This document shows, in pieces, positions 2,629 through 26,138 of a DNA stretch of 33,713 nt. Below the pieces are notes generated by a model. It saw only the letters and a list, made by a program, of their open reading frames with translations. It was not told the DNA's origin and did not search any database. Source of the stretch: Mobula birostris (lineage: Eukaryota). How positions within the stretch are numbered: position 1 is the first letter of the stretch; the number at the start of each line of letters is the position of its first letter. The position numbers and the translations under genes were made by a program. The DNA is taken from NCBI RefSeq assembly GCF_030028105.1, contig NW_027276920.1:1-33713 (forward strand), read 5' to 3'.

Positions 2629-2767
2629 CAAACTTGGGCAACCGATGCTTTTTGTGCAGTATCTATGCCTCTGATATTCTTGTAAACTTCTCTCAGATCA
2701 GCCCTCAGCCTTCGATGCCGCAATGGAAACAACCCAAGTTTTCCCGTCCTCTCTTTATAGTATAAAC

Positions 2768-3326
2768 GTTTCAACTGAATTTTCGTTATTCTTTTGCTGA
2801 GATAATAGGAAGCTATGTTGGACTTAGTCCGACTGCAAAATTAATGCTACTGTTCGATACCATTCGGTAGAAATGACAGGCTTATCACAGCAGGCTCGGC
2901 TCCATCGGCTGAGAGAGAAATCGTCTTAACACTTCAAATTGACAGTTTTTCACTCGGCCATCAACAGCAATGTTTCGTATTTTCTCCTGTTTGTTAAAAG
3001 TTCCTGACCGGCCAAGGCTTCCTCATGTTTTTTGTTTGCTTCATTTCGCCTTGCAGACATCCTCAATGCTGTTTTCCATTAATTACCCTGCTTTCCATTA
3101 ACCACATAACGTGATATGCTATAAACACCTATAAACACCTCGTCTTTAAATGCATCGTGGAAATATTTTGGTTAAAGGCATCATGTCTCATCATGCCATT
3201 TTTCTATCTGTTCCTTATCCCATTAACACTGCTTTTAATATAAGATGGATGAGTACAGCACAGGAATAGGACCTTAGTCAAAGCTCTCTGTCGCGTTCAC
3301 GATGTCATATTAAATTAAATCTTTGC
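2768..3326. repeat. Copy 1 of a diverged ~550-bp direct duplication (partner 28685-29240)
   Basis: Colinear shared blocks, e.g. gtttcaactgaattt, gactgcaaaattaa(t/a)gctactgtt, aacacttcaa(a/g)ttga, ttaacactgcttttaa. Offset about 25.9 kb. Confidence 0.8.
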
Positions 3327-3699
3327 GAGTTTATTGTGCTCTATATCCCAAAATCCACTGCACATTTGAGTGTCCATTCTTAAGCCTCTTTCCTACAGTA
3401 TCTTCTTCTGCTTTCACCTGCTTTAATGTATAGGGATTTTTATTTAATTCCTGCAAGTAAGCTACGTCGAGTTCCCGGCGCTCCTACATTTTATGCGAAT
3501 TGAACTTTTTGTAACCATTTGTCACGTGTTTCTGCGAGTCCGTATGAAGGAAATGTATACCGTTTAAATGAAAGAGCAGGACTTTCAACTAATTCTCAAA
3601 TGTATTTTCTAACTCGTCTTAGTCTGGAACACATTAAAGTAATCAAATGACAATCTGGTTCTCAGTGACCTGAAGCAGATATTATTTCATGTAATCTAT

Positions 3700-4325
3700 G
3701 AATTCTGTTATGACTTGCACCATCTGAAAAATTACACGGCTGGCAGGAAGGAGCTCAAGAATGAAATTAGGAGAGCTAGAAGGGGGCATGAGAACGCCTT
3801 GGCGAGCAGGATTAAGGAAAATCCCAAGGCATTCTACGAGTATGTGAAGAGCAGGAGGTTGAGCCGTGAGGGAATGGGACCAAAGGAGAATGAGTAGAAA
3901 CATGTGCATGGAGCCGGAGGAGATAGCGGAGGTACTTAACGAATACTTTGCTTCAGAATTCGCTAGTGAAAAGGACCTTTGCAATTGTGGGGATGACTTA
4001 CAGTGACTTGGAACGCTTGATACTTTTGAAAGGTATTATGAATAGGTAGGGAAGGAACACTAGAGGAATGGAAGGTTGCAAATGTTGTTTCCTTTTTCGA
4101 TAAAGGGAGTAGAGATAACCCAGGAAATTGTAGACCAGTGAATCCTACTTCTGGGGTGGGCCAGTTGTAGAGAAGATCCAGAAAGGCAGGATTTGTGAGC
4201 ATTTGGAGAGACATAATTTGATTAAGGATAGTCAGCATGGCTTTGGCTTTGTCAAGGGCGTGACATGCTTTACGAACCTGAGTAAATTCTTTGAGGATAT
4301 AACAAAACACATTACTGAAGGTAGA
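3700..4325 (+). mobile_element. CR1 LINE ORF2 internal fragment
   Basis: ELKNEIRRARRGHENALASRIKENPKAFYEYVKSRR, followed by degenerate NCRPV and SQHGF/CLTNL motifs. Confidence 0.85.
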
Positions 4326-5500
4326 ATTGAATCGAATTGGATGAATTTAACTTAATACTTAAATACATGCTCATCTCCGTCTAAATGTGCAATATGCAAT
4401 TTATAGTCATTTATAATAAATAGTATGTACAGCAGGATAGTCAATATAACATAGAAATAAAGCTGTGTCAACATGAGTTAAGCAGTTTAATGATCTGGTG
4501 GAAGAAGCTGTCCTGGAGCCTGTTGGTCGCGGCTTTTAGATGAGATAAGATTACATTCAACTTTATTGTCTTTGTGCCGAGTACAGATACGAAGCCAAAG
4601 AAATGTAGTTAGAATCTGACCAGAAATGCAAAGAATAGTGTTATTTACAAAATAACTTCGAATGAAAAGTAAGTGCTACAGCACACAAATATAAAAGTAC
4701 TGAGACAGTACAGTATGGGTGCAATACCTCTTTGCGCTGTGATGTGAGGTTCAGCAGGGTCACAGCGTCAGGGAAGAAGCTCTTCCTGTGCCTGCTGGGA
4801 GGAGAGTAAAAAGTCCATGCTTAGGGTGAGATGCATCCTTGATAATGCTTTTCGCCCTGCCTTGGCAGCGTTTATGGTAGGTGTTCTCAATGGTGGGCAA
4901 TTGAGTGTCGATAATCAGCTGGAAAGTTTTCAACACAGGCTGGAGTGCTTTGCGGTCCGATACGGGGCAATTGTCATACCACACTGAGATGCAGTTGGTG
5001 AGTATGCTCTCAATGGTACAGCGGTAAAAGTCCGTCAGTATCCTGGGATAGATTTATGCTTTCTTGATGCTCTGCAGGAAATAAAGGGGTTGTTGTGCCT
5101 TTTTGATCAGGATGGAGGAGTTCAGGGAGTAGGTGAGATCCTCGGAAATGTGGACACCAAGGAATTTGAAGCTTGATACACGCTCCACTACAGCTCCGTT
5201 GATGTAGATGGGGACGGGAGTGTGTCTCCTAGGATGCCTGAATTCCACAATGATCTCCTTGGTCTTCTGGGCGTTAAGGGCCTGGTTGTTGTCGGCACAC
5301 CACGCGGCCAGGTACTGGACCTCGTCCCTGTAGGCCGTCTCTTCATCCCCTCTGATCAGGCCAACTACCGCCGTGTCGTCTGCGAACTTGATTATGGAGT
5401 TAGAACCACGTACAGGAACGCAGTCATAGGTGAAAATGGAGTACAGAAGAGGGCTCAGCACACAGCCGTGAGGCACGCTGGTGTTCTGGGTGAGAGGCGT
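4326..5500 (-). mobile_element. Rex1/Babar-type LINE: RT C-terminal part and 3' UTR, with an additional 3'-end fragment
   Basis: GCVLSPLLYSIFTYDC, IIKFADDTAVVGLI, KTKEIIVEFR, FKFLGVHISEDL, KKAQQPLYFL and WYDNC..DRKALQ..HPKHGLFTLLP are typical of Rex1/Babar RT. 3' end near 4540 (gacaataaagttgaa on the minus strand). Confidence 0.85.
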
Positions 5501-5589
5501 AACTTAACTGATTGGGGTCTGTTAGTCAAAAAGCTGCGGTACCATTTCTCGGATGGTAGCAGCTGGAAGAGTATTTGCCAAAGCTGTGT

Positions 5590-6304
5590 ACGACCCTATC
5601 TACCCGTGACGCCACTTTCAACAAATTATGCAGCTTTATTCCCAGATCCTTTTGTCCTATCACACTCCTCAGTGCCCTGCCATTTACCGTGTAAGATCTA
5701 CCCTGGCTGGCTGCACCGAAATGCAACATCTCGTACTTGCCAAATGTAAGTTCCAACTGCCACTTTTAGCCTTTTTTTCCCTACTGATCCAGATCCCTCT
5801 GCAGCCAGGAGAGCTTCCCTTGTTGTCCACTGCACCCACAATCCTGCTGTAAACCGCAAATTTGCTGATCTGTTCATGGACATCGTCATCCAGATCGGTA
5901 ATATAGAAGACAGACAGCAACGGACCCTGCGCAGACCCCTGTGGAATGCCCGATCAGAGAGGCAACCATACAAAGCTATTTCTTGGCTTCTCCCACAAAG
6001 TCTGTGTCGAACCCAATTTACTACTTCATCTTGAATGCCAAGCAACTGAACCTTCTTGACCAACTTTCCATGTGGGCCTTGTCAAATGCCTTACTAAAGT
6101 CGATGTTGGCAACATGCGCTGACTTGTCTTCATCCACTTCTCTGGTAACCTCCTCGGAAAACTCTATCAAATTGGTTAGATATGACATACAATGCGCGAA
6201 GCCATGCTGACTCTCCTTAATCAGTCTATGTCTATCCAAATACTTCTATATCAGGTCCCTTAGAACATTTCCCAACAACTTTCACCCTACCGCTGTCAGG
6301 CTCA
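5590..6304 (-). mobile_element. CR1 LINE RT fragment
   Basis: ESQHGFAHCMSYLTNLIEFSEEVT, IDFSKAFDK, KYEMLHFG and KVASRVDRVV across frameshifted ORFs. Confidence 0.88.
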
Positions 6305-7335
6305 TTGTTGTTGTTCAGTCGTTAAGTCGAGACCGAATCTTCGTGATCTCATGGACTTCTGTACACCAAGCCTTCTTGTTGGAAACAGCCTCTCTAAGAT
6401 CCCCCAAGGTTATACGCATTGTCTGAGTATATTATCCTCCGTCATTGTAGCCTCTGTTGCCCTCTACTTCTTTTACCTTCTGTTTTACCGAACATGACAG
6501 TCTTCTCCAAGGAATCCTGTCTACTCATGATTGGTCAAAATATTTGAACTTCTGTCTCATAATCAAGCCTCCTAATGAGCAGTCTGGCTGTATTTGTTCA
6601 AATATTGTCTTGCTGGATCTTCTTGCTCTCTAACGAACTCTTAACACTTTTCTCCAGCATCCAAGTTCAAAGGTGTTGATCCTTTTGTATTCAGTCCAGC
6701 TCTCACAGCCATACGTTGCAACTGGAAATACTATAGACTTGACTATACGGATTTTCGTAGACAATGTTATATCTCTGCTCTTTAGTATTTTATCTAAATT
6801 TGCCATTGCCACCCTCCCCAGAAGTAAGCGGCGTTTAATTTTGTGGCTGCAGTTCGCATTTATGGAAATCTTTGAACGGAGGAAGACAAAATCCGTCATT
6901 GTTTCCACTTCCTTTCCATTTATTACCATGGAGTTGATAGGGATGGACGACATAATCTTTGCTTTCTTCACATTGAGCACAAGCCAGCTTTTGCACTTTC
7001 TTACTTCACTTTGATGAGAAATTTCCTCAGATCCTCCTTACTTTCAGCCATTGGAGTGCTATCATCTGCACATCTGAGTTTCGTCCGGCAATTTTGAATC
7101 CAACATTTGAGTCGCCTAGACCAGCATTCCTCATAATGTGTTCAGCGTATAGATTAGATAAATAAGGAGTGTCACATCCTGCAGCCTTATTATCGGCAAT
7201 GCGTTTTTTTGATCACCCATTCGACTTCAGTTTCCAGAATGTCTGGCTCTAGATCGATGAGGGAATCATTGCAGGTGTCTTCACCGTTGGGATCGTCCCT
7301 GTACAATTTTTGTATGTATTCCTGTCATTTCTTTC
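6305..7335 (-). mobile_element. BovB-like RTE-clade LINE fragment, internally deleted
   Basis: LNVKKAKIMSS..KIKRRLLLGRVAMANLDKILKSRDITLSTKIRIVKSIVFPVATYGCESWT..RINTFELGCWRKVLRV closely matches BovB RT C-terminus as I recall it. LEPDILETEVEW lies upstream. The 3' end shows an (aac)n tail and ttcagtcgttaagtcg. Confidence 0.85.
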
Positions 7336-12052: not shown

Positions 12053-12184
12053 TCACAGTTTCTTTGATGTATTTACGTCTGCGTACAATGCATGTTTGTT
12101 TTGCTGTTTGGATGCTGGTGTGTTCTTAGAATCGGGAATCTGCAGAGCAGCGTAAGTCAGTTTGTCAGCTCCATTTCCTGCAGT
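12053..12184 (-). CDS. Exon 7 (terminal): TAGNGADKLTYAALQIPDSKNTPASKQQNKHALYADVNTSKKL*, with ITIM LTYAAL and a second Tyr motif ALYADV
   Basis: Acceptor tattttcgcag|ACT (phase 0). Two YxxL/V motifs 23 residues apart, then TGA. Confidence 0.8.
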   Translation of the reverse strand, partial: TAGNGADKLTYAALQIPDSKNTPASKQQNKHALYADVNTSKKL

Positions 12185-15100
12185 CTGCGAAAATATTTGA
12201 AAATCAGGGGTTAATTGAGAATCCATTGAGTTGAACAAATTTAATCAAGAATTGTAATATAAATTAGTGATGCACTCATAAGTTATCAATTTTAGATTTC
12301 TGCCGTTTTACACAAAGTTTATGTCAACATTGTTTCAAAATTTCCCTTTTTGATTTATTTGGTATTTCAACTCCAAGAGCCTGTGCTGTCGCACTGAACA
12401 ATGAGCGTTTCTTTCCTTACTGAAAATGAACTTCAACAACATCGAGTTGGGAGAGTAGATAACTCCTTGAAGCAGCAGGTATAGTACAAAATATTTCGCT
12501 AACTCAATATACAAGAGCATTGTTGTGTTATGTTTGTCTGATTGCCGCAAACTGTTTAGTCTACAGATCTTACGGTGTTTCCTCAGTCACACCTGCCAAC
12601 AGAATTCCAAATACACACAGACACTGTCATCAGTGGATACCGCACAACTGAAAGATTGAACGCTGGCACTTTGTTCATTCATGCCACATGGTTACTGTTT
12701 TGTCACAGTTCGGCATTTCCATGAATAACACCAATGTTCGGTTGGTTCAGTGTTTCTCGGTTATTATCAGATATTCGAGTTCATTGTGGAGCTGATAATG
12801 AGCATTGGAAAGGATGGCTATTCCTAGTTTCATGCTTTTTAGTGTTTCCACATTACATATGAAATTGAATTCATAAAAGCGAGCGTAAAAAAGATAATCT
12901 CAATGGATTCTGCAGATGCTGGAAATCTTGAGGAATGCAAAAGAAATGTTATGTAATTCATTCGGTAAGGCAACATGCATGAAGGTAAATACGCTGTTGA
13001 TGTTTCTGTCTGAAATGCTTTAGCAGGACACCGAAAGGAGGGGGTCAGAAGCTAGAATAGGAAGGTGGGGAATGAATACAAGATGGCAGGTGATATGAGA
13101 AACCAGCTGGGAAAGAACGTGTGTTGATGATGGGGATGGAATAACTTAGAAGCTGGGAGGTGATGAGTGGAAAAGGAATAGGGTGCAAGAAGAAATCTGA
13201 TAGGAGGAGACAGTGGACCCCGGAGGAAATGGAAGAAAGAAGGGTACCAGTGGAGGTGATGGGCAGATGAGGAGAAGAGAAGCGGTGAAAGGGAGCCATA
13301 GTTGGGAATGGAGAAAAAAATAGAAAGGGAATGATGAAATAGGCATTAAAAATTAGAGAGATCAATGTTCATGCTTTCAGGTTGGAGTCCACCCAGATGG
13401 AAGAAAAATGTGATGATATTTCGAGGGTGTTTAGTCGTAAATGGTACAGTGAAAAAGTTCAGATCAGGTCCGTAAAATTAATCTCCTTTGGAATATCGTT
13501 TATGTACATGTTGGAATCGATTGTTAGGAATGAGATTACGGAGTACCTGGAGGCACATGACAAGTTAGGCCAAAGGCAGCATGGCTTTCTGAAAGGAAAA
13601 TCCTGCCTGTCTAACCTACCGCAATTTTTTGAGGAAATTGCAAGCAGGGTAGACAAAGGAGATGTAGTAGATGTGGTACACTTGGATTTTCAGAAGGCCT
13701 TTGTCAAGGTGCCGCACATGAAGCTGCTTAGCAAGATAAGAGCGTATGGAATTACAGAGGCGTTACTAACATGGGTGAACATTGCTGATTGGTAGAAAAC
13801 AGAGAGTGGAATAAAGGGATCCTATTTTGGCTGATTACCGGTTACCAGCGGAGTTACACAGGGGTTGGTGTTGCGACCGCTCCTTTTTATGATGTATGTC
13901 AATGATTTTGACTATGGGATTAATGGATTTTGGCTAAATTTGCCGATGATACAAAGATAGTTGGAGGGGTGGATAGTGCTGAGGAAACAGAGCTGCAGAG
14001 AGACTTAGATAGTTTAGGGGAAAGGGCAAAGAAGTGGCAAATAAAATACAATGTTGGAAAGTGTATGTTCATGCACATCGGTGGAAGAAATAAACGTGCA
14101 GACGATTATTTAGGTGGGAAAATAATTCAAAATGCCGTGATGCAAAGGGAATTGTGAGTCCTTATGCAGGATATCTGAAAGGTTAACCTCCATGTTAAAT
14201 CGGTTGTGAAGAAGGTGAATGCAAAGTTGGAATTCATTTCTCGAGGTATAGAATATAAGAACAGGGTGTGATGTTTAGGCTCTATAAGGCACTCGTGAGA
14301 CCACACTTGGAGTATTGTTTGCAGTTTTGGGCTCTTTATTTTGGAAGGGATATGCTGACATCGGAGAGGGTTTAGAGAAGATTCTCGAGAATGATTCCAG
14401 GAACCAAAGGGTTACCGTATGAGGAACGCCTGGCAGCTCTTGGGATGTATTCCTTGGAGTTCAGGAGAATTGGGGGCGGGGGGATGGGGATCTCATAGAA
14501 ACATTCCGAATATTAAAAGGCTTGAACAGATTAGATGTGGCAAATTTATTTCCATGCTAGGGGAGTCTAGGACAAGAGGGCACGACTTCAGGATTGAAGG
14601 ACGTCCATTTAGAAAGAGATGCGGAGAAATTACTTTAGTCAGAGGGTAGTAAATATGTGGAATTTGTTGCAATGGGCGACTGTGGAGGCCAAGTCATTAG
14701 GTGCATTTAAGGCAGGGATACAGGGATAGATACATTTTTGATTAGCCAGGGCATCAAAGGGTATGGGGAGAAGGCAGCGGAGTGGGGATGACTGGAAGAA
14801 TTGGATCAGCCCATGATTGAATGACGGAGCAGACACGATGTGCCGAATGGCCTACTTCTGCTTCTATATTTTATGGTATTGTATATCTGTTGTGCGTGGC
14901 TCGGTAGCGTAGCGGCTAGGTTAACACTATTACAGCAGCGGTGATCGAGGTTTAATTCCCGTAACCGACGAAATGGTGTGTTTCTATGTTTTCCCATGAC
15001 CGTATGACTTTTTCTGGGCGCTCAAGTTACCTCCCACGTTCCAAACACTTACGGGTGAGTCGGCTAATTAGTCACATGGCTGTAATTGGGTGGCACGAAC

Positions 15101-18100
15101 TAGCTGGGTTGTACGGCTCTGTTACAGTGGCGTGCAAATTTTGGGCACCCCGGTCAAAATTTCTGTTACTGTGAATAGTTAAGTGAGTAGCAGTGGAACT
15201 GATTTCCAAAAGTCATAAAGTTAAAGATGAAACATTCTTTTCAACATTTTAAGCAAAATTAGTGCATTTTTGGTCCAATTTTAGAGTGAAAGAAAAGGAA
15301 AGGTGCACCATGCAAATGTTTACGGACCCCAAGAGATTTGAGCTCTCAGGTAACTTTTACCAAGGTCTCAGACCTTAATTAGGATGTTAGGGCTATGGCT
15401 TGTTCACAGTTACCGTTAGGAAAGACCAGGTGATGCAAATTTTAAAGCTTTATTAATATCCTGATTGCTGAAACCTTGTCCCAACAATCAGAAGACATCA
15501 GCTCCTCTAAGCGGTTGCCTAGCACTCTGAAAATTAAAATAAATGATGCGCACAAAGCAGGAGAAAGCTAGCAAAGCGTTTTCAGGTAGCCGTTTCCTCA
15601 GTTCATAATGTAATTAAGAAATGGTAGTTAACAGGAACGGTGGAGGTCAAGTTGAGGTCTGGAAGACCAAGAAAACTTTCCTAGAGAACTGCTTGTTGGA
15701 TTACTAGAAAGGCAAATCAAAACCCCCGTTTGACTGTAAAAGACCTTCAGGAAGAATTAGCAGACTCTGGAGTGGTGGTGCACTGTTCTACTGTGCAGCG
15801 ACACCTGCACAAATATGACCTTCATGGAAGAGTCATCAAAAGAAAACCTTTCCTGCATCCTCATTACAAAATTCAGCGTCAGAAGTTTGCAGAGGAACAT
15901 CTAAACAAGCCTGATGCATTTTGCAAACAGGTCCTGTGGACTAATGAAGTTAAAATAGAACTTTTTGGCCGCAATGAACAAAGGTATGTTTGGAGAAGAA
16001 AGTGTGCAGAATTTCATGAAATTAAAACACCTCTCCAACTGTTAAGCACGGGGGTGGATCGATCATTATGCTTTTGGCTTGTGTTGCAGACAGTGGCACG
16101 AGGAGCAGTTCACTGTTAGAGGGAAGAATGAATTCAATTAAATACCAGCAAATTCTGGAAGCAAACATCACACCGTCTGTAAAAAAGCTGAAGATGAAAA
16201 GAGGATGGATAATGATCCTGAACACACCTCAAAATCCACAATGAACTACCTTAAGAGGCGCAAGTTGAAGGTTTTGCCATGGCCCTCAGAGTCCCCCGAC
16301 CTGAATATCATCGAAAATCTGTGGATAGACCGGAAAAGAGCAATGCATACAAGACGGCCCAGAAATCTCACAGAACTAGAAGCCTTTTGCAAGGAAGAAT
16401 GGGCGAAAATCCCTCAAACAAGAATTGAAAGGCTCTTAGCTGGCTACAGAAAGCATTTACAAGCTGTGATACTTGCCAAAGGGGGTGTTACTATGTACTG
16501 ACCATGCAGGGTGCCCAAAATTTTGCTTCGGGCCCTGTTCCTTTTTTTGTTAATTTGAAATTGTAAAAGAAGGAAATAAAAAAAGTAATCCTGCTTAAAA
16601 TATTAAAGAAATGTGTGCACCTTTAACTTTATGCCTTTTGGAAATCAGGTCATCTTTTACTCGATCACAGTAACAGAAATTTTGACCAGGTGTGCCCAAA
16701 CACTTGCATGTCATAGTTTATCTCTAAAGCAAATTCATATATTATACATGGCAATCTCTCTGCTTTACCTGAGAATAGATAATGCATTCTTCTTCTTGTC
16801 GATCTTTGCGAAATCCTTTACTTTCCCTCATATTTAGTGAAACATGGGGAGTGGTGTCATCAACCGCAGCTTGGTCAGCCTGTTGGAAAAACACACTTAA
16901 TACTGATAACTGATACAAGGTCAGTGATCATGAACTGTTTGGTTTGGAATATCCGCGTGTTATGATATTGTCCGTATATCATTCCGGAGGTGGGATACCA
17001 AACCCATTTCAGGCTGGAAGTCACTACGTTTACTTTAGATTTCCAAGCAACCACTTAAAACCATCCTTTCAATCGGATCGGTTTCTCAGGTCTGGCCATT
17101 TCTTTTGTTTTCATCTCTTCTGTTATATCCCTTACACGCTTCTAAGTTTTGTGGACGGGCTTTATCCGATGCGGTTTTCTTAGCACCCCGTCAAATTACT
17201 ATAATTATTGGCATGACGCGATTTCGTCCCCACGGTGCATTTAGAGCCTGTGACTCTTGAAACTCGCATTATCTAGGTTAAGGATATTGGAACAAGTGAC
17301 AAGACCTGTTGTACGGTTCCAGCCTGGCTTATCTGAGGTAGCAAATACGGGAGGGGCATCTTGCCAGCTGTTGAGCTGATTGGTGTTGCTGGTGTATCAA
17401 TTAAATTACAATCGAAAGAAGTAGAGCTGTTGGACATGCCCGTTACAGTAAATGGTTAAAATAGCATTTGTTTCGGCTGAAATAATGACAGAGCATTCCA
17501 GAGCAATAAAGCGACGGTAAAAAAAATCTTAAACATTCCAGCTTCATCTTAGATATTACTCTCAGAAGCGGTCCTTCATTTCGGGAAGTGCTACAAATGC
17601 TGATAGAAGTTTCAACGGAGTTCTACTATAATGAAGCCAGTGGGATATGACAACCTTGCTTTGGTGATGTGAAAAGTTGTTGCAGCAAATATCGTTACGT
17701 AAAAGTAAAAATATGCGCTACAATTGGGAAGGTAATTAATGAACACAAAAAAGTTGTTTCCCGTGTAGACAGATGGGTATCTAACCGATAAAGGTTTAAT
17801 ATATGCTATCAGGAGGATCCAGGTGGGACACATTTAATAACATTGAACTGCTGGAACTTTGAAGTGAAACAGACAAATAAGACACACAGTAGATCAGGAA
17901 ACACGAGAGGAAAGAGAAACAATCAACGTTTACGTTGCTTTCCGGGGAGAGGTATTCAACCTGAAAGGACAGCGTTTTCTCTTTCCTAAAACGGCGTTAG
18001 AGGTTCTTAATTTCTGGATTCAATCCAAAATGGGAGATGACAATACATTTATATGTTGCAGGCATTTCTTTCAAAATTGAGGATAATAATCCTTCAGCGT

Positions 18101-21100
18101 AGCCTCCTGGAGTAGAAGGCGCCTGGTGGAATTTCCTTAACATATGGGTATCATTGTGCACCAGATACTACACGGTTTATTGGAAGCATATTCGATTCCA
18201 TTGCAGGTCATGCACTGTTCTGTGGATCTTTGTTGGGAATCGGTGTTAAAAACTCCATATGACTTTCCAAAGCAAAATTTCGTTGCATTTTCAATTTTGC
18301 TTGCTGTGCGTTCAAATCAGATGTAACATATATTGTGAAATGCGTGTACTGTATTTTTCCATTGTGCACGACACAGTGATTCTCGTAAGCCGACATTTGA
18401 CATCTAAAACATCTCAGTCTTAGATTTGTATTTAATTATTCGTCAAACGAAGCGTGATTAACAGCATAACTTCCATTAGTATACACTACCGTTCATCTTA
18501 ATGCAACCGGTTATGAACTGATGTAGAATCCTGAAAGACGATAGATTCAGATTCAATAGGAATATTCAAATCTACCTTGGATAAAACTGCAAAATAAAGA
18601 GGTGTCAGGTAGTTTTATTGTTCCCTACTGCGTTTCAAATGTTAGAACAAAATAAATCTTAGGCGGAAGGACAAGATGGCGGTATGCCGTGCGTGCGCAG
18701 CTCTCCGGTGAAAAATGATATTGTATCTGTCAAATAGGGGCCGTGGACAATTCTGATTTGATGGAGAATGGACGTGAAAGCACAGAGGAACATTCGCTGC
18801 TGTCGTTACTGTGTGGTCGTGAATCTTTCGGAGGGTAGGCCTCAAAATCCCCGACCTTGCCTGCTTTTGGCGACCGAGAAGGAGGTCGAATCGTTCGGGC
18901 AGATGTGGCGCTCAGTACTCGGTATCGTAGAGTTGATCAGAGCTCGAAGTTTTCGGATGACTCAGAGTCGGATTGTGGTCGGCATGGCAGGGAGAGTTTT
19001 TCTTCGTTCTCTCGTCTGCGTGAGATGTGGGACATTTGAGAAACCTTGTACTTTACTGTGCTCACGGACTTCTTCATCAAGTTATGGTATTGTTGCACTG
19101 CTTGTAACTATATGCTATAATTATGTGGTTTTGTCAGTTTTTTCAGTCTGGGTTTGTCCTGTGTTTTGTGATATCACACCGGAGGAAATAATGTATCATT
19201 TCTTAATGCATGCATTACTAAATGACAATAAAAGAGGAATACTTGTCTTCATAATCATAAATTTGTAATATTTAAGGTACGTTTGACGTTAGGCCGGTAA
19301 TTTTGACATTGATAGTGGGTAAGTTATTGGAGGGAGTACTAAGAGACAGAATCTACAAGCATTTGGATAGACGGAGACATATTAGGGAGAGTCATAATGG
19401 CTTTGTGCATGGTAGGTCATGTTTGACCAATCTATTGGAGTTTTTCGAGGAGTTTACCAGGAAAGTGGATGAAGGGAAGGCAGTGGATGTTGTCTAAAGC
19501 CTTTGACAGGGTCCCGCATGGGAGGTTAGTTCGGAAAATTCAGTCGCTAGGTATACATGGAGAGGTGGTAAATTGGATTAGACATTGGCTCAATGGAAGA
19601 GGCCAAAGACCAGTAGTAGGAAATTGCTTCTCAGAGTGGAGACCTGTGACTCGTGGTGCGCCACAGGGATCAGTGCTGGGTCCATTGTTATTTGTCATCT
19701 GTATCAATTATTTGGATGATAATGTGCTAAATTGGATCAGCAAATTTGCTGATTATACAAAGATTTGAGATGTACTAGACAGTGAGGAAGGTTCTCGGAG
19801 CCTGCAGAGGGACTTGGACCAGCCGGAAAAATGGGCTGAAAAATGGCAGATAGAGTTTAATACAGACAAGTGTGAGGTATTGCACTTTGGAAGGACAAAC
19901 CAAGGTAGAACATACAGGGTTAATGGTAAGGCACTGAGGCGTGCAGTAGAACAGAGGGATCTTGGAATACAGATACAAAATTCCCTAAAAGTGGCGTCAC
20001 AGGTAGATAGGGTCGTAAAGAGAGCTTTTGGTACATTGGCCTTTATTAATCAAAGTATTGAGTATCAAAGCTGGAATGTTATGATGAGGTTGTATAAGGC
20101 ACTGGTAAGGCCGAATTTGGAGTATTGTGTTCAGTTTTGGTTACCAAATTACAGGAAGGATATTAATAAGGTTGAAAGAGTGCAGAAAAGGTTTACAAGG
20201 ATGTTGCCGGGACTTGAGAAACTGAGTTACAGACAAAGGTTGAATAGATTAGGACTTTATTCCCTAGAGCGTAGAAGAATGAGTGGTGATTTGATAGCGG
20301 TATATAAAATTATGATGGGTATAGATAGGGTGAATGCAAGCAGGCTTTTCCCACTGAGGCTAGGGGAGAAAAAAACCAGAGGACATGGGTTAAGGTTGAA
20401 GGGGGAAAAGTTTAAAGGGGGGCTTCTTCACACAGAGAGTGGTGGGAGTGTGGAATGAGCTGCCAGACGAGGTGGTAAATGCGGGTTCTTTTTTAACACT
20501 TAAGAATAAATGGGACAGATACATGGGTGGGAAGTGTATGGAGGGATGTGGTCCGTGTGCAGGTCAGTGGGACTAGGCAGAAAATAATTTGGCAGAGCCA
20601 AGAAGGGCCAAAGGCCTGTTTCTGTGCTGTAGTTTTTCTATGGTTTCTGTGGTTTTCTATATCTCTGCTATACCTATACGCCGATCTCAAAGAAGTCAAG
20701 CCACTTCACTTACCAGCTCTTCACTCTGACATCTGTCCAAAGAGCTTGTGTTAATCCCTTAAGAAAAATAAAAGAAATTATTTACATTGTAAAAGTTGGA
20801 CATTATTCATTTGATACAAATAGAATTCATCGCGTAAGAGGAACTGCTGAAGGTACGGATCTTTCAGAAAGCATTTTGTGGTATTAGTTGTCTTAATACA
20901 GTGCATCAACATCATGGCACTATGCTCAAGAGTCTACGACATTTAAAGAAGCCGTAAAGTGATAATAGTATATGAGTTGCTGTACTACATCTAAATACTG
21001 TCGTTAAAATGGAAATTAAAATCAATGAGACATGCATGAGATCGTCAATGTTCTTTAAACAGTGACAGTAAGCATAGACCTATGCCAAGCTGCTTACGCT

Positions 21101-24100
21101 TCAAAGTATAGACCTGCCATTGTATCCAAAACGACATTTGAAGTATTCCAAAGGGATATAACGGCATTTATGAACAAGATACAGCATATAGATACAGCGA
21201 GTGGACTGGTGGAATTATTGTATATTAAGATCCAGCTTGTGTTGTGCCTGATGATTATCAATGTAATCAGGTTCGACCATGTCAATCCCTGTCTAATCAT
21301 GCTCTAATGACATTTATTCTTTTTGAAGTTAAGTATCTTTCACACATCTATTTTGCACGAATAGAGGTGATATTTCTCAGCAATCAGGTTTCTTACCGTG
21401 CAATCTCTTTAACTTGACTTTCACCAAAACTATTATCAGAGCTAAAATTGCCGATCCGCCGAGCGCACATGCCAGAATGAATTTAGTATCAGCGCCTTGT
21501 GGATCAACAGGGGGAAAAGAAGAAACTGTGAAGCACTTATGCATCTAAAAAATGCACACATGAGAATCAATAATGCAAAATATCTAATAGGCTCCTTTCA
21601 AATCTCACTGCGCAACATCGGAAAATATGTCATAAGACAGGAAATGCAAATTCCCACCTTTGTTATATTTCGATGAGATATAGAGTTTACGTTTTGCTTT
21701 CCACAATTTTGGCAAATGTTCACAAGTTTGCTACCTTGCAAATACTGCACGAATTCAATTTCTTAATTCGCCCTACACGAATTAAACTAACGGAATAACA
21801 CAAGTTTTTGAACACCTTTCACGTTCAATACTCACTATCAATTACTACGCTTCAAAATTAGCCATTCTTCCGTCTTTGGGTAGCTGTTCAGTTACTGTTC
21901 TTAACAAGGTCACATTGACCCCACCACAATGACTTGTAAGCGCTTCCATCTTACATTGAGCAGAAAAGATTCTGAACATGCTGAAATTCAGAATAACACA
22001 TAAAATCCTGGAAGAACTCAGCCGATCAGGCAGATCTAAAATTTCGACGTTTAAGGCCGAGATCCAACATCATGACTTCATCAAGACACCATCTTACCTT
22101 GGATGTAGCTGAAACTGGCAGACAACGTGAGGGAGCCATGCGACACCAGGCAGGTGTAAATATCTTTTCCCCAAGTAGACTGCGTAATTTCCAATAAACT
22201 AAATACTTCGTACAAGCCGTCCACGTTCCGGTTTGTCACATTTTGTATTCCAGTGTGAATTTGCTTGTTATTTCTTTGCCAAATGATTTCTAATTTCTCC
22301 GGGTAGAAGGCAGCCGTTTTACAAAGGAGCTTTCGAGGAGACGAAAACCCTCCAACAGGAACAATTTCCACTGGAGTTGGAGGAGCTTGAATCAAAACGT
22401 AGTTATATTGAGTATTTTCGATCCATTTCAGTACAGATAATTTCGCTTATCTCCCTTCCAACTAGCCTGATGCTCAACTATCAAATCAGTTACCCGCCAG
22501 TATTAACCAGTATTTAATAAATTCTTCCAATTTCACGTTCTGCTTATTGTTACTCAACCATACACACACACTCCGATGCAAAATACGCCGTGACGCCTCA
22601 CCAGTGCTTTATAAAGTCTGAACATTACATTCTTGCTTTTATATTCTAGTCCTCTTGAAATGAATGCGATCATCGGATTTGCCTTCCTGGCCACAGACCC
22701 AAACTGCAAATTAACCTGTATGGAATACTGCACACGGACTCGCAAGTCCCTTACCACCTCAATGTTTTTTTGTGTTTTCTCTCCAGTTGGAAAATATTCA
22801 AAACTTTCACACCCTCCACCAAACTGCATGCTCACACACTTCTCGAAACTGTATTCCATCTTCCATTTCTTTGCCTGTCCTCCTAATCTGTCTCAGTCTT
22901 TCTGTAGCCTCTCTATTTCCTAAAACTACCTGCCCATCCACCTCTCTTCATATCGTCTGCAAGCTTTGCAACAAAGCCATCAATTCCACCATCCATATCA
23001 TTGACATATAACATTAAACGAATCGGTCACTGCACAGACCCCTGTGGAAGACAGTTCGTCACGGGCAGCCAACCAGAAAATTCTCCCTTTATTTCCATTC
23101 TTTGTCACTTACCAACCAGCTACTGCTTTATCCACCCTAGTATCTTTCTTGTTATACTTTGGGCTCGTAGCTTGTTTAACAGCCTTGTGTGTGGTACCTT
23201 GTCAAAGGCCTTCTGAAAATCCAAGTACACAACAACCGATTCTGCCTACTTTTATCTATCCTGCTTTTTATTCCTTCAAATAATTCAATCAGATTTGTCT
23301 GGCGAGAGTTTCCTTTGAGGATATCATGCTGACAATGGCGTGTTTTATTATGTGTCTCCAAGTAATCTAATACCTGATCCTTAATGATGGATTCCAACAT
23401 CTTGACAACCAGTGAGGTCAGACTGACTGGCCTATAGTTTCCCTTTTCTGCCTCTCTGCTTTCTTGAAGAGTGGAGTGACATTTGTAATTTTCCAGTCTT
23501 CCAGAACCATTCCAGAATCGTAATTCTTGAAAGACCTTTACTAATGCCTCCACAATCTATCAGCAACTTTTATCAGAATCATGGTATGTACATCATCTGG
23601 TCTAGGTGAATTACCTACTTTCAGAACTTTCAGTTTCCCAAGAACTTGCACTCCAATTATGTCTCTAGTTTTGCCGTTGTTCAAGATAGACTCTCGGAAT
23701 AAACCGGGATAATATAGACTAGTTGGTATTACAGTGAAGTGGGTAATTTATTGGAAGATATTCGAAAGAATAGGATAGATAAATATTGAGATAGACTGGG
23801 TTTGTTTGGGAATAAGCAACATTATTTTGTGCAATGTAGGCTCTGTCTAACCAATCTTAATGAACTTTTCGAGCGGGTTACCATGGATCTTGATGAAGGA
23901 TAGCAGTGGTCAATATGGATTTTAGCAAGAGCTTTGGAAAAGTTCTGCATGGGGGTGGTGGGCTGATCAAGTACGTTCGCTTGGCATTCAGGATGAAGGA
24001 GTAAGTTGTGTCTAACGTTGGCTTCGCGGGAGAAGCCAGTGTATGGTAGTAGATGGTTGTTCTTTGAACGAAGGCCTTTGACTGGTGGTGTGCCGCATGG

Positions 24101-26138
24101 CGATCAAAGCTTGCAGCGGGTTATGGACCAGGTCTAAAAATGCGTTGAAAATGGCAGATAGGATTTAATGAAGGTAATTGTAAGCTGTTGTACTTTAAGA
24201 AGACAAACCATTCTCCGATACACATCGTCAACGAGACTGGGATTGACGAATGCGGTAAAAAATGATCTTGGAATACAGATTGATAATTCATTGGAAATGG
24301 AGCAAAAGGCAGTGGTTTCGTAAAGATAACCTTTGTCATATTGGACTTCACATATCAGAGTATTGAGTGTAAAAGTTGGAATGTTATGCTGAAGTTGCAT
24401 TAGACGTCAGTGAGAACAAATTTGGTGTATTGTTCACAGTTCTGGTTAATTATCTGCAGGAAAGTTATAAATATGATTGAATGAGTACAAAACAACTTAC
24501 AAGATGTGGCATGAATTTGAGGACATGGATTATGAGGAAAGGTTTAACAGGTAAGGATTTTTTGAATGATTCGTAAGAGAACGAGCGACCATTTGATCGA
24601 GGTATACAAAATTATGAGGGATGTAGATATATGGTGTATACAAGCCTGCATCATCCACTGAGGTTGGGTGAGAGTGTAATTGGAATTCATAGCTTCAGAG
24701 TGAAATGAAAAGTATTAAAGGCGAACCTGGTGGGAAACGTCTTTACTCGGCCGGTGATGCTATTGTGGAGTGAGCTGCCAGAGGAGGTGTTTGCGACCGA
24801 CTCTCTACCCGTTACAGTACTATCCAATCGTATCAAAATTCACCTTAACCCTGAGAGGTCCATATTTCTCACAATTTATATGGTGAAAGAAGTATAGATT
24901 TTGCTAACCCTGCATGACAAAAGTTGGAATGACATTTTGCAGTGCATGTGATAGATGTTGGAATTAACTCATTTGGAGCTGGGTATTATTCCTGTCTACT
25001 TGTTGATGCGGAATTGGAGCATTGTGCTGCTGCATGGAGACCCTTTGACAGAGATTACTCTATTTAAGTATTAATATTCTGCGTCCTCTGTGCTGAGGAA
25101 TCGAGTTATCCAACTCCAGCCATTCACATTAATATTAATATTATTTCAGCCTCTTGCTTGCAACACAATCCTAACCTTGCTTGAAAAGTAAAGTAATTCG
25201 TTGTATTCAAAGTACCTTTGTGATAATGAGGGTGAAGTCCTAAGGTATCACTAACCTTGGACATTCGGTTTAATTGGGAGATAGCTGATGAGCAGGGCTG
25301 GACGAATAGCAGTGGGGAAAGAACCGAGGAAATACGATACGATAAACAGAATCAACTTCATTATGCGCCTAATAGTTGCTACACGAAATGTGATTAATTC
25401 TTCTGTTCTTTATAATTCTGAATTGAGAATCCCTGGACTGGGGTATATTTTAACGCGGGGAACAAATGTATTCTCGCCGCTTGTTTAGTCAAATAGAAAC
25501 ATTTATTATCATCCTCATCACTAAGTTTGATGTAAAATGCACAGAGCCGAAAATCTCCAAACAGCCACACTCACCGAACACAGTGAGGCTGGTGCCACAG
25601 CTACTCACGAAAAATTGCTCCTGAAACTTTACTTCACAGTAATATAGTCCAGAGTCGCTGAATTTGACATTTCGGAGTACAAGCGTTCCTCTTCCCCTTT
25701 CTACAGTAAATTGTCTTCTGCTGTCCCTTTCTAAAAATGCCTTCTCGCCTTGCCTCCGCCAACGAATGTCAACAGTATCTTGTGATAGTGGAAATTTGCA
25801 GAACATCGTGACATTCGCACCACCCGGGACGTTCAGGTCCCGCGGGAATTGAGATACTTCGTTCGCCGTTACTTTGACGACTGCCGGAAAAATAAACAAG
25901 AGTATTAACAACAGTTAAACACAGTGAATTAACAAAAACTGATGACGTAAGTCACTGGACATCTAACAGCGAAAAACGGCCGAATAGATGAAAAACGGTA
26001 ACCGAATATGCTGCAGGCACCCAGGGTTAAATATTATGAAATAGAATATTCAATTCGGAAACGGCGTGTATAAATCAGCATACTTAGCCAAGTAATAACC
26101 AGAAGTGTCATGTACGAAACCGTAAACTTCTCCACCAT
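12053..26138 (-). CDS. Seven-exon SIRP-like inhibitory IgSF receptor: leader-VJ-C1-TM-cytoplasmic ITIMs, 344 aa. Exons 26138-26084, 25880-25575, 22385-22098, 21495-21397, 20757-20714, 16879-16769, 12184-12053
   Basis: All introns are GT-AG with compatible phases (1,1,1,1,0,0). Exon lengths 55+306+288+99+44+111+132=1035 nt, open to TGA. Domain order is that of a type I membrane receptor. Confidence 0.78.
12905..13390 (+). repeat. SINE-like interspersed repeat with purine-rich body; related short pieces at ~21960-22075, ~30290-30560 and ~32460-32640
   Basis: gattctgcagatgctggaaatc start and GA-rich body. Related copies carry a gacgttt..gacccttcatcagaactg-like motif. Family not identified. Confidence 0.55.
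13480..14880 (+). mobile_element. CR1 LINE 3' part (RT and 3' UTR), antisense within intron 6
   Basis: QHGFLKGKSCLSNL, LDFQKAFVKVPH, KFADDTKI, RTRGHDFRIEG. 3' end gaatggcctacttctgcttctatatt. Confidence 0.9.
14894..15124 (+). mobile_element. tRNA-derived HE1/V-SINE-type SINE, interrupted near its 3' end by the Tc1 element
   Basis: A-box-like tggctcggtagcgtagcgg and B-box-like ggtttaattcc. Core tt.cctcccacgttccaaa resembles the V-SINE domain. The tail tatctctaaa resumes at ~16719. Confidence 0.7.
15125..16716 (+). mobile_element. Tc1-family IR/DR transposon, ~1.6 kb, transposase inactivated
   Basis: TA|CAGTGGCGTGCAAATTTTGGGCACCC left end. Long (~200 bp) inverted repeats with internal direct repeats. 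DD34E remnants: LWTNEVKIELFG (D>N), DNDPEH, WPSESPDLNIIENLW. Start codon lost; stops and frameshifts present. Confidence 0.92.
16769..16879 (-). CDS. Exon 6 (cytoplasmic): ADQAAVDDTTPHVSLNMRESKGFRKDRQEEECIIYSQ
   Basis: Acceptor gtgtttttccaacag|GCT and donor CAG|GTAAAG. 111 nt, phase 0-0, open. Acidic stretch precedes a Tyr. Confidence 0.65.
18665..19260 (+). repeat. Unclassified interspersed repeat (SINE or LINE-3'-like)
   Basis: GC-richer block from caagatggcgg to gacaataaaagagg..(ataatc)n tail, contrasting with AT-rich flanks. Its ORFs have no recognisable motif. Confidence 0.4.
19295..20660 (+). mobile_element. CR1 LINE 3' part, antisense within intron 5
   Basis: GRSCLTNLLEFFEE, QGSVLGPLLF, KCEVLHFGRTN, RPNLEYCVQFW, KTRGHGLRLKG. 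Tail (ttctatgg)-like ends about 50 bp from exon 5. Confidence 0.93.
20714..20757 (-). CDS. Exon 5 (cytoplasmic): (G)INTSSLDRCQSEEL
   Basis: Acceptor ttttatttttcttaag|GG and donor CTG|GTAAGT. 44 nt, phase 1-0. Confidence 0.68.
21397..21495 (-). CDS. Exon 4 (transmembrane): (G)ADTKFILACALGGSAILALIIVLVKVKLKRLH
   Basis: Acceptor ttccccctgttgatccacaag|GC and donor G|GTAAGA. 99 nt, phase 1-1. A 20-residue hydrophobic run with no charged residue is followed by a basic stop-transfer stretch KVKLKR. Confidence 0.88.
22098..22385 (-). CDS. Exon 3: Ig C1-set domain
   Basis: LLCKTAAFYPEKLEIIW..NVDGLYEVFSLLEI..YTCLVSHGSL matches the C1 consensus CxxxxFYP/W/DGxY/YxCxVxH. Acceptor tcaag|CT and donor G|GTAAGA. 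288 nt, phase 1-1. Confidence 0.92.
22500..23640 (-). mobile_element. CR1 LINE RT fragment (sense to the gene) in intron 2
   Basis: GNYRPVSLTSLVVKMLESIIKD and GLEYKSKNVMFRLYKALVR. Degenerate. Confidence 0.88.
23680..24790 (+). mobile_element. CR1 LINE 3' fragment, inverted relative to the adjacent CR1
   Basis: Degenerate CLTNLNELFE, cagtgagaacaaatttggtgtattgttcacagttctgg (RPNLEYCVQFW-like) and 3' UTR-like gagtgagctgccagagg. Confidence 0.8.
25575..25880 (-). CDS. Exon 2: Ig V-set domain with an integral J-like G strand (VJ-type)
   Basis: VSQFP..GANVTMFC..W..TLVLRNVKFSDSGLYYC..SCGTSLTV. Acceptor ttgtttatttttccggcag|TC and donor G|GTGAGT. 306 nt, phase 1-1. Confidence 0.93.
26084..26138 (-). 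CDS. Exon 1: leader MVEKFTVSYMTLLVITWL(I), continuing VKVTA in exon 2
   Basis: AAGATGG is a strong Kozak context. Hydrophobic core present. Phase-1 donor A|GTATGC fits the V exon. Predicted cleavage after VTA. Confidence 0.7.

What the first reader, a model, noticed from the sequence alone, without database searches (positions are those of the whole stretch)
12053..26138. Non-rearranging, antigen-receptor-like VJ-C1 inhibitory receptor (SIRP-like) hidden across seven exons
Seen: an intact leader / germline-joined VJ / single C1 / uncharged TM / ITIM-tail gene with consistent splice phases and no rearranging segments. Established: C1-set domains are largely restricted to Ig, TCR, MHC, beta2m, tapasin, SIRP and B7-H6. 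A germline V(J)-C1 membrane protein is the architecture often proposed for the pre-RAG ancestor of antigen receptors. Mammalian SIRPalpha is V-C1-C1. Inference: this is a basal gnathostome member of that class, structurally like a TCR or Ig light chain but wired as an inhibitory receptor, and may belong to an uncharacterised chondrichthyan family. Orthology to SIRP, NITR, NKp30 or B7-H6 cannot be decided from this window.
Basis: partly seen in the sequence, partly recalled or inferred. Interest (0 to 1): 0.82.

Follow-up and report, generated by a model that had tools for sequence, protein, structure and literature searches.

The report
Manta ray antibody-like inhibitory receptor gene
This is an intact seven-exon manta-ray gene for a membrane receptor whose outer part resembles an antibody light chain that needs no DNA rearrangement and whose tail carries an "off-switch" motif. 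It is one copy of a large shark, ray and chimaera receptor family that databases predict under inconsistent names and that I found described in no paper I could search.

Summary
On the minus strand, seven exons with canonical AG/GT sites and phases 1-1-1-1-0-0 join into a 344-aa protein. It has a split leader, one V exon that already contains the J-like strand, one C1-set exon, an uncharged TM, and a tail with ITIM LTYAAL followed 23 residues later by ALYADV.

The window is a whole unplaced Mobula birostris scaffold. RefSeq already predicts the gene: isoform X2 equals my model minus the C1 exon. The M. hypostoma orthologue is 96% identical and includes the C1 exon.

The gene belongs to a family of more than 80 predicted V(J)-C1 receptors in rays, sharks and Callorhinchus. 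Long-tail ITIM/ITSM forms with uncharged TM are interleaved in the tree with short-tail forms that have Arg/Lys/Asp/Glu in the TM. That is a paired inhibitory/activating family, working like SIRP, NITR or KIR.

No full-length relative was found outside Chondrichthyes. SIRPα, PD-L1, TAPBPR, CD276, B7-H6 and Ig light chains are all about equally distant (16-22% identity), so orthology to SIRP is not shown.

It is a new variant of a known kind. Other windows of this scan hit the same family.

The parts
26084..26138 (-). Exon 1: start codon and most of the signal peptide (MVEKFTVSYMTLLVITWL + 1 nt). This is a split leader, with a phase-1 donor gtatgc.
   Evidence: Identical to residues 1-18 of RefSeq P0007.
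25575..25880 (-). Exon 2: end of the leader plus a complete V domain with the J-like G strand in the same exon (306 nt, phase 1 to 1).
   Evidence: Pfam V-set 5.5e-13. Canonical C46...W59...DSGLYYC100. The exon runs without a break into SSCGTSLTVF and then gtgagt.
25576..25605 (-). J-like strand SSCGTSLTVF, with an extra unpaired Cys113 (codon 25597-25599). Paralogues have GNGSGTKLTVF here.
   Evidence: Family alignment and motif scan.
22098..22385 (-). Exon 3: a single C1-set domain (288 nt, phase 1 to 1), with FYPE...W...YTCLVSH. RefSeq isoform X2 skips it.
   Evidence: Pfam C1-set 7.8e-14. The best single PDB domain for the family profile is human Ig lambda C at 42 bits; UrIg2 domains score 35-36 bits. 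pLDDT is about 90-95.
21397..21495 (-). Exon 4: short stalk, transmembrane helix and the start of the tail (GADTK-FILACALGGSAILALIIVLV-KVKLKRLH). The TM lies at 21422-21481 and carries no charge.
   Evidence: The acceptor at 21495 reproduces P0007 exactly. Helix 221-250 in the model.
20714..20757 (-). Exon 5: cytoplasmic (G)INTSSLDRCQSEEL, 44 nt, phase 1 to 0.
16769..16879 (-). Exon 6: cytoplasmic ADQAAVDDTTPHVSLNMRESKGFRKDRQEEECIIYSQ. The paralogues' first tyrosine motif (TEYAPL/TAYASL) is TPHVSL here. It also holds the family-conserved IIYSQT.
12053..12184 (-). Exon 7: the end of the tail, with ITIM LTYAAL (12143-12160), ITIM-like ALYADV (12074-12091) and stop TGA (12053-12055). The two tyrosines are 23 residues apart.

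Best explanation
The locus is an intact Mobula birostris gene for a type-I membrane receptor. It has a signal peptide, one germline-joined V(J) domain, one C1-set domain, an uncharged transmembrane helix, and a roughly 100-residue tail with one canonical ITIM (LTYAAL) and a second tyrosine motif (ALYADV) 23 residues downstream.

It is one member of a multigene, tandemly clustered family of non-rearranging V(J)-C1 receptors found across cartilaginous fish. That family contains both ITIM/ITSM-tailed members and short-tailed members with a charged residue in the TM.

The most likely mechanism is the following. The V domain binds an unknown ligand. Src-family kinases phosphorylate Y312 and Y335. 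The doubly phosphorylated tail recruits the tandem SH2 domains of SHP-1 or SHP-2, and these damp activation signals. Close paralogues have 83-85% identical ectodomains but carry Lys or Arg in the TM. They probably signal the opposite way through ITAM adaptors.

What is shown: the gene structure, the domains, the motifs, the family and its taxonomic range, and the interleaving of tail types. What is inferred: expression, phosphorylation, phosphatase recruitment, adaptor pairing and the ligand.
For: - **Gene model:** the exon model has canonical splice sites and consistent phases, and gives 344 aa.
- **Match to RefSeq:** there is an exact match to RefSeq isoform X2 when the C1 exon is skipped, and 96.2% identity to the 344-aa M. 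hypostoma orthologue, which includes the C1 exon and has the same ~14.1-kb gene span. The two are sister sequences at 100/100 support in the tree.
- **Domains:** Pfam V-set 5.5e-13 and C1-set 7.8e-14. The AlphaFold model has pLDDT around 90-95 over both Ig domains and a TM helix at 221-250.
- **No rearrangement signals:** no RSS was found, and V and J lie in one exon.
- **Family:** 85 and 60 significant hits, essentially all chondrichthyan, with a drop from 160 bits or more to 60 bits or less outside the group. Callorhinchus copies lie in tandem and in one orientation at 15.25-15.61 Mb of one scaffold.
- **Tail types:** 29 long-tail ITIM forms and 18 charged-TM short-tail forms are interleaved; starred branches force at least 11 changes.
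- **Nearest named proteins:** SIRP-alpha by protein-language features (0.96, 201-205 of 256 features) and by Foldseek against Swiss-Prot (6e-16).
Against: - No transcript evidence could be obtained for this copy, so the C1-containing isoform rests on the orthologue's model.
- The second tyrosine motif has Ala at position -2. That fits neither the strict ITIM nor the strict ITSM consensus.
- The membrane-proximal TxYxxL motif of the paralogues is lost here (Y to H).
- The J-like strand has lost its first glycine and gained a Cys.
- The gene sits on a 33.7-kb unplaced scaffold full of LINE and Tc1 fragments.
- No ligand, cell type or biochemical property is known.
Confidence: 0.8

Rival explanations
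1. It is the cartilaginous-fish orthologue or co-orthologue of SIRP-alpha, descended from the same ancestral gene and binding a CD47-like ligand.
For: SIRP-alpha clusters are the nearest by language-model features and the top Foldseek Swiss-Prot hits. The V has a J-like strand, the constant domain is C1-set, and the tail has paired tyrosine motifs resembling SIRP-alpha's xTYAxL and xEYAxV (my own knowledge). Some paralogues have two C1 domains (P0168, P0186). Charged-TM partners exist, as with SIRP-beta.
Against: Identity is only 16-21%. The E-values are within about three orders of magnitude of those for PD-L1, TAPBPR, CD276, B7-H6 and Ig lambda, and part of the SIRP alignment runs over the disordered tail. 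This gene has one C1 domain, not two. SIRP V domains did not reach the 45-bit level that CD79b reached in the PDB profile search. The C1 profile's best single domain is Ig lambda C. NCBI's best-hit names scatter over eight unrelated families. No synteny was obtained.
Confidence: 0.15
2. It is a B7-family ligand (B7-H6/NCR3LG1-like, as NCBI names its orthologue) and not a receptor.
For: The orthologue P0151 and many paralogues are named NCR3LG1-like. The architecture is V-C1-TM. The C1 ends in H-x-SL-x-x-(P/S), which I recall from B7-H6 and tapasin. B7-H6, CD276 and PD-L1 are among the Foldseek hits.
Against: The family V domain carries a canonical J-type G strand (GSGTKLTV), which B7-family V domains lack (my own knowledge). 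A conserved ITIM plus ITSM tandem, together with partners that have Arg in the TM, is a receptor signature. Pfam prefers C1-set (7.8e-14) to the butyrophilin-type C domain (4e-3).
Confidence: 0.07
3. It belongs with other germline-joined VJ genes (NKp30/NCR3, PRARP, or UrIg/UrIg2) and has simply gained a C1 exon or a membrane anchor.
For: The family J motif GNG(S/T)G(T/S)xLxV resembles the GNGT...V motifs of the turtle and gecko multi-VJ ITIM receptors. Those are the closest V relatives outside cartilaginous fish (hhalign E 2.6e-15, 35% identity). Isoform X2 is V-TM-ITIM, the PRARP/NKp30 layout. UrIg2 is the second-ranked chain overall in the C1 profile search.
Against: UrIg is secreted with three C domains, and UrIg2 has nine or more C domains (PMC12227049). 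No protein named NCR3 appeared among the hits. The reptile relatives have no C1 domain. No reference NKp30 or PRARP sequences were available to test this.
Confidence: 0.1
4. It is a decaying or misassembled extra copy on an unplaced scaffold, with no function of its own.
For: The scaffold is unplaced and repeat-rich. The gene has lost one tyrosine motif and the GxG glycine. Another copy in this genome was reported as frameshifted (earlier finding s1-145046).
Against: All seven exons are open with intact splice sites. The M. hypostoma orthologue shares the same changes and is 98.5% identical over the ectodomain, so the features predate the species split and the gene has stayed intact. No other M. 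birostris model among those recovered exceeds 85% ectodomain identity, so it is not a haplotig of those.
Confidence: 0.05

Closest known systems
SIRP-alpha / SIRP-beta (signal-regulatory proteins, mammalian paired receptors)
   Same: N-terminal V domain with a J-like strand; C1-set constant domain; single-pass TM; tail tyrosines in ITIM-type pairs at spacing suited to SHP-1/2 binding; sister genes with a basic TM residue and a short tail. Nearest by language-model features and by Foldseek.
   Different: One C1 domain rather than two. Only 16-21% identity. No evidence of shared synteny or of CD47 binding. The family is far larger and was found only in cartilaginous fish.
UrIg and UrIg2 (non-rearranging shark VJ-C1 genes; PMC12227049)
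   Same: Germline-joined VJ exon, split leader and C1-type constant domains in elasmobranchs. UrIg2 is among the best C1 matches in the PDB.
   Different: UrIg is secreted with three C domains. UrIg2 has nine to eleven C domains. Neither has an ITIM tail or charged-TM partners, and both are single genes, not a multigene cluster.
NITRs of bony fish (novel immune-type receptors)
   Same: A multigene family of non-rearranging V(J) receptors with inhibitory (ITIM) and activating (charged TM) members that interconvert over evolution (my own knowledge).
   Different: The second domain of NITRs is I- or C2-type or absent, not C1. They are known only from bony fish. No sequence relationship was tested here.
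Ig light chains / TCR chains
   Same: A V(J)-C1 two-domain ectodomain. Fab light chains are the best PDB fold matches, and Ig lambda C is the best single-domain match of the C1 profile. The family J motif GSGTKLTV is close to J-lambda.
   Different: No RSS and no separate V and J segments. It has a membrane anchor with its own signalling tail. Identity is about 20-22%.
CD79b (Ig-beta)
   Same: The best single V domain in the PDB for both the window exon and the family profile (29 and 46.6 bits). From memory, CD79b also has a Cys in the J-like strand (GCGTELRV) that makes the interchain disulfide, at the position of Cys113 here.
   Different: CD79b has no C1 domain and carries an ITAM, not an ITIM. 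The Cys is specific to this gene and a few paralogues, not a feature of the family.

Membership tests
C1-set Ig domain proteins | Match to the Pfam C1-set model above its curated cutoff, with the FYP...W...YxCxVxH hallmarks and a seven-strand sheet that includes strand D | tested here: met
   PF07654 scores 52.2 bits against a cutoff of 21. The hallmarks FYPEKLEIIW and YTCLVSH are present. The model has eight DSSP strand segments (one very short) across 126-215, consistent with a C1-type sandwich, at pLDDT about 90.
Germline-joined VJ (non-rearranging antigen-receptor-like V) genes | V framework and the J-type G strand (F/W-G-x-G-T-x-L-x-V) in one exon, with no RSS | tested here: met
   A single 306-nt exon runs from the leader end through SSCGTSLTVF to the donor. 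No RSS was found. The motif is degenerate in this copy (S-C-G in place of G-x-G) but canonical in paralogues (GSGTKLTV).
ITIM-bearing inhibitory immunoreceptors | At least one cytoplasmic (I/V/L/S)xYxx(I/V/L) motif, with an uncharged TM | tested here: met
   LTYAAL at Y312; the TM FILACALGGSAILALIIVLV has no charge. Phosphorylation and SHP binding cannot be tested with these tools.
Paired (inhibitory/activating) receptor families | Closely related ectodomains attached either to ITIM tails or to short tails with a charged TM residue | tested here: met
   P0154 (Lys in the TM) and P0158 (Arg in the TM) are 84-85% identical to this ectodomain. The two tail types are interleaved across the 80-sequence tree. 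Adaptor pairing was not tested.
SIRP family | V-C1-C1 ectodomain | tested here: not met
   There is only one C1 exon between the V and TM exons, and only two Ig exons in the window. A few paralogue models have two C1 domains.
SIRP family | Orthology: closer to SIRPs than to other V-C1 proteins, with shared synteny | tested here: inconclusive
   SIRP-alpha ranks first (6e-16), but PD-L1, TAPBPR, CD276, B7-H6 and Ig lambda follow within about three orders of magnitude, at 16-22% identity. The window has no neighbouring genes, and the edges of the Callorhinchus cluster were not reached.
SIRP family | Binding of CD47 by the V domain | not testable with these tools
   Needs a binding assay.
UrIg / UrIg2 | VJ followed by three or more C1 domains; secreted (UrIg) or with many repeated C domains (UrIg2); linked to the MHC or to the antigen-receptor complex | tested here: not met
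   This gene has a single C1 domain, a TM and an ITIM tail. The definitions come from PMC12227049. Linkage could not be tested.
B7 family (B7-H6) | V domain without a J-type G strand; a ligand role with no paired activating/inhibitory forms | tested here: not met
   The family has a J-type GxGTxLxV strand and charged-TM partners. The B7 criterion itself comes from my own knowledge.

The most novel reading that the evidence does not exclude
The family is not a SIRP offshoot. It is a surviving membrane-bound, signalling lineage of the pre-RAG VJ-C1 gene pool: sister to Ig/TCR and UrIg, with a lambda-like C domain and a canonical J strand. It would be the innate paired-receptor system of cartilaginous fish, filling the role NITRs play in bony fish. 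If so, it would offer a living example of what the antigen-receptor precursor did before it was split by the RAG transposon.
Probability: 0.15. Interest if true: 0.85.

Novelty: new variant of a known kind. Interest (0 to 1): 0.5.

Why it matters
Non-rearranging VJ-C1 genes are being sought as relics of the antigen-receptor precursor; UrIg and UrIg2 were reported in 2023 and 2025. This gene shows that cartilaginous fish also carry a large, clustered family of VJ-C1 chains that are membrane-bound and signal through ITIMs or, in paralogues, probably through charged-TM adaptors. I found no paper in the held library that describes it, and RefSeq names its members after eight unrelated proteins. 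A proper description would do three things. It would correct those annotations. It would give sharks and rays a candidate equivalent of the SIRP, NITR and KIR paired receptors. It would also add a data point to the debate on what V-C1 proteins did before RAG. This particular copy adds little beyond the family, since it is one of at least ten genes in this genome.

Tried and rejected
- **Literature:** I searched for UrIg, SIRP with cartilaginous fish, PRARP, shark NCR3 and paired receptors. The UrIg/UrIg2 and CD28-family papers were readable. The shark NCR3, PRARP, UrIg 2023 and Ohta-Flajnik review papers are not held.
- **Domain-level ranking against SIRP, NKp30, B7-H6 and tapasin in the PDB:** the table shows only 60 rows, and these fill with multi-domain Ig, titin and contactin chains. 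Only upper bounds could be read for the families of interest.
- **Reference sequences:** I had none for those families as tool ids, and I did not type any from memory, so no cross-family V or C1 phylogeny was built.
- **Synteny:** the window's flanks hold only LINE and Tc1 fragments. Four Callorhinchus look-ups all fell inside the tandem cluster.
- **My first TM-exon acceptor** (21525, cacag|tt) is in phase, but RefSeq and the orthologue use 21495.
- **My first guess for the start of exon 7** (12190) was six bases off.
- **Rejected readings:** a rearranging V segment (no RSS, J in the same exon) and a UrIg-type secreted protein (it has a TM and a tail).
Full report
**What is in the sequence**

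The feature lies on the minus strand. Reading from the ATG at 26138, a 55-nt leader exon ends in a phase-1 donor. A 306-nt exon then encodes the last residues of the signal peptide and a complete V domain. This exon runs without interruption through ...DSGLYYCEVKFQEQFFVSSCGTSLTVF to a gtgagt donor.

A 288-nt exon follows 3.2 kb downstream. It encodes PPTPVEIVPVGGFSSPRKLLCKTAAFYPEKLEIIWQ...YTCLVSHGSLTLSASFSYIQ. Pfam scores the two exons as V-set (5.5e-13) and C1-set (7.8e-14, 52 bits against a cutoff of 21). A tblastn of both exons against the window finds no further Ig exon.

The remaining exons were located with the help of the database model. They are a 99-nt stalk/TM exon, a 44-nt exon, a 111-nt exon and a 132-nt terminal exon. 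All boundaries are AG/GT, the phases are 1,1,1,1,0,0, and the product is 344 aa.

**Independent support for the model**

A library-wide HMMER search with the V exon returned a 248-aa protein that is 100% identical (P0007). It is RefSeq XP_072106610.1, named 'uncharacterized protein isoform X2' of Mobula birostris, on a contig of 33,713 bases. The window is therefore a whole unplaced scaffold. My exon set without the C1 exon translates to P0007 exactly.

With the C1 exon included, the protein is 96.2% identical to a 344-aa Mobula hypostoma model (P0151). That model includes the C1 domain, uses the same C1-to-TM junction (SYIQ|GADTKF), and its gene spans 14,118 bp against 14,086 bp here. In an 80-sequence maximum-likelihood tree the two are sisters with 100/100 support.

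**Not a rearranging segment**

The V framework and the J-type strand share one exon that ends in a splice donor. A scan for heptamer/nonamer pairs with 12- or 23-bp spacers found none on either strand (0 observed, 0.48 expected from shuffles).

In most relatives the strand reads GNGSGTKLTVF, which is a canonical G-x-G-T-x-L-x-V. In this gene and its orthologue it reads SSCGTSLTVF. The first glycine is lost and an unpaired Cys113 is gained.

**The protein**

- The AlphaFold model, built from a 46-sequence family alignment, has pLDDT of about 90-95 across both Ig domains. It shows a helix at residues 221-250 and a disordered tail.
- The TM, FILACALGGSAILALIIVLV, has no charged residue.
- The tail has three tyrosines: IIY299SQT, LTY312AAL (a canonical ITIM) and ALY335ADV.
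- Y312 and Y335 are 23 residues apart. To my knowledge this is within the range seen in receptors that engage the tandem SH2 domains of SHP-1/2, such as PD-1, PECAM-1 and SIRP-alpha.
- Paralogues have TxYADV at the last site and a further TEYAPL/TAYASL motif. In this gene and its orthologue that further motif is TPHVSL.

**The family**

A search with the full-length M. hypostoma relative, and two profile searches, returned 34, 85 and 60 significant proteins. Essentially all come from cartilaginous fish:

- Rays: Mobula, Hypanus, Hemitrygon, Pristis, Amblyraja, Leucoraja, Narcine.
- Sharks: Chiloscyllium, Hemiscyllium, Heterodontus, Heptranchias, Scyliorhinus, Mustelus, Carcharodon, Cetorhinus, Pristiophorus.
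- The chimaera Callorhinchus.

Scores fall from 160 bits or more to 60 bits (a sturgeon butyrophilin-like protein) outside the group. These searches pre-filter candidates by shared words, so distant relatives can be missed. However, Foldseek against AlphaFold DB clusters gives the same picture. The top hit has 31% identity (its accession prefix suggests a shark-genome entry; the tool gave no organism), and everything else has 13-28%.

RefSeq names the members after SIRP-alpha (SHPS-1), B7-H6, PD-L1, CD276, TAPBPR, Ig lambda, TCR beta or MHC class II. That is what one expects when no named protein is clearly the closest. At least ten models from M. birostris fall in the family. Four Callorhinchus genes lie in one orientation between 15.25 and 15.61 Mb of one scaffold, with further family genes at their flanks.

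**Paired tail types**

I sorted the 80 sequences by what follows the C1 domain. This gave 29 with tails of 50 residues or more, ITIM/ITSM motifs and an uncharged TM. It gave 18 with short tails and Arg, Lys, Asp or Glu inside the TM, for example IPRFVLGFL and IFRSALGG.

The two kinds are interleaved through the tree. Starred branches force at least 11 changes of the charged-TM label. The closest paralogues of the window gene in its own genome are P0154 (Lys in the TM, 84.8% ectodomain identity) and P0158 (Arg in the TM, short tail, 84.3%). This is the pattern of the paired inhibitory/activating receptor families such as SIRP, KIR and NITR.

**Comparison with known proteins**

- By protein-language features, the nearest large clusters are SIRP-alpha (score 0.96; 201-205 of 256 shared features).
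- Foldseek against Swiss-Prot models puts bovine and human SIRP-alpha first (6e-16 and 1.7e-15). PD-L1, TAPBPR, CD276, B7-H6, Ig lambda, TCR beta and butyrophilins follow down to about 1e-12. All have 16-22% identity, and part of the SIRP alignment runs over the tail.
- Against solved structures, the best matches are Fab light chains.
- The family C1 profile matches human Ig lambda C best as a single domain (42 bits), followed by two UrIg2 domains (35-36 bits).
- The family V profile's best single V domains are CD79b and the amphioxus VJ-C2 protein (46.6 bits each). NKp30 and SIRP V-only chains therefore score below about 45 bits.
- Outside cartilaginous fish, the closest V domains belong to gecko and turtle receptors with two to six tandem VJ domains and no C1 domain; the gecko protein and one turtle model carry ITIM tails. 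One of them aligns to the family V profile with hhalign E 2.6e-15 and 35% identity.
- UrIg is secreted with three C domains, and UrIg2 has nine or more, so neither has this architecture (PMC12227049).

**Conclusion**

The gene works like SIRP-alpha: a VJ-C1 ectodomain, an uncharged TM and an ITIM tail, with charged-TM sister genes. It fails the V-C1-C1 criterion for the SIRP family, and orthology is unresolved.

The gene is already predicted in RefSeq. Other windows of this scan reached the same family on other pieces of this genome. Their statement that the family reaches amphibians or turtles is reproduced here only for the V domain, not for the V-C1 architecture.

I found no paper in the held library that describes the family. 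Several key papers were not readable, so I cannot exclude that it has been described.

Noticed in passing
window 25603-25608 (minus strand): A perfect 5' splice-site consensus (ttc|GTGAGT) lies inside the V exon, exactly where the J-like strand begins (F-F|V-S-S-C). If used, it would cut off the J strand in phase 0 and would not fit the phase-1 C1 exon. It is probably silent, but it sits at the V/J boundary.
   Followed up: no
window 25597-25599 (Cys113): There is an extra unpaired cysteine in the J-like strand, shared with the M. hypostoma orthologue. From memory, CD79b has a Cys at the same place that forms its interchain disulfide. This might allow disulfide-linked dimers.
   Followed up: partly
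window 16769-16790 (IIYSQT) and family alignment: A third tail tyrosine, in (I/V)(I/V)Y(S/T/A)Q(T/A)K, is conserved from Callorhinchus to Mobula. It fits neither the ITIM nor the ITSM consensus, and its role is unknown.
   Followed up: no
window 22098-22385: RefSeq isoform X2 skips the in-frame C1 exon. That gives a V-TM-ITIM protein with the layout of NKp30 or PRARP. Whether this isoform is real could not be checked.
   Followed up: partly
window 15730-16501 (+), 13382-14157 (+), 19303-20458 (+), 22554-23553 (-), 1-7000: The introns and flanks are filled with transposon remains. There is a Tc1/mariner transposase (HTH_Tnp_Tc3_2 1.5e-15, DDE_3 7e-10) in intron 6. LINE reverse-transcriptase fragments lie in introns 5 and 6 and upstream; an unconfirmed RT-like ORF (no Pfam hit) lies in intron 2. 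No other host gene is on the scaffold.
   Followed up: yes
P0121 (gecko), P0140/P0085/P0030 (turtles): Reptile proteins auto-named obscurin-like, titin-like, pIgR-like, FCRL5-like or NCAM2 are in fact receptors made of two to six tandem VJ-type V domains (GNGTGTQVTI). Some carry ITIM tails (VTYVDL...VVYTEV). They look like another misnamed and apparently unstudied receptor family.
   Followed up: partly
P0168 (Chiloscyllium), P0186 (Amblyraja): Some family models have two C1 domains after the V domain, the SIRP-like V-C1-C1 layout. I did not check whether these are real genes or fusions of neighbouring genes.
   Followed up: no
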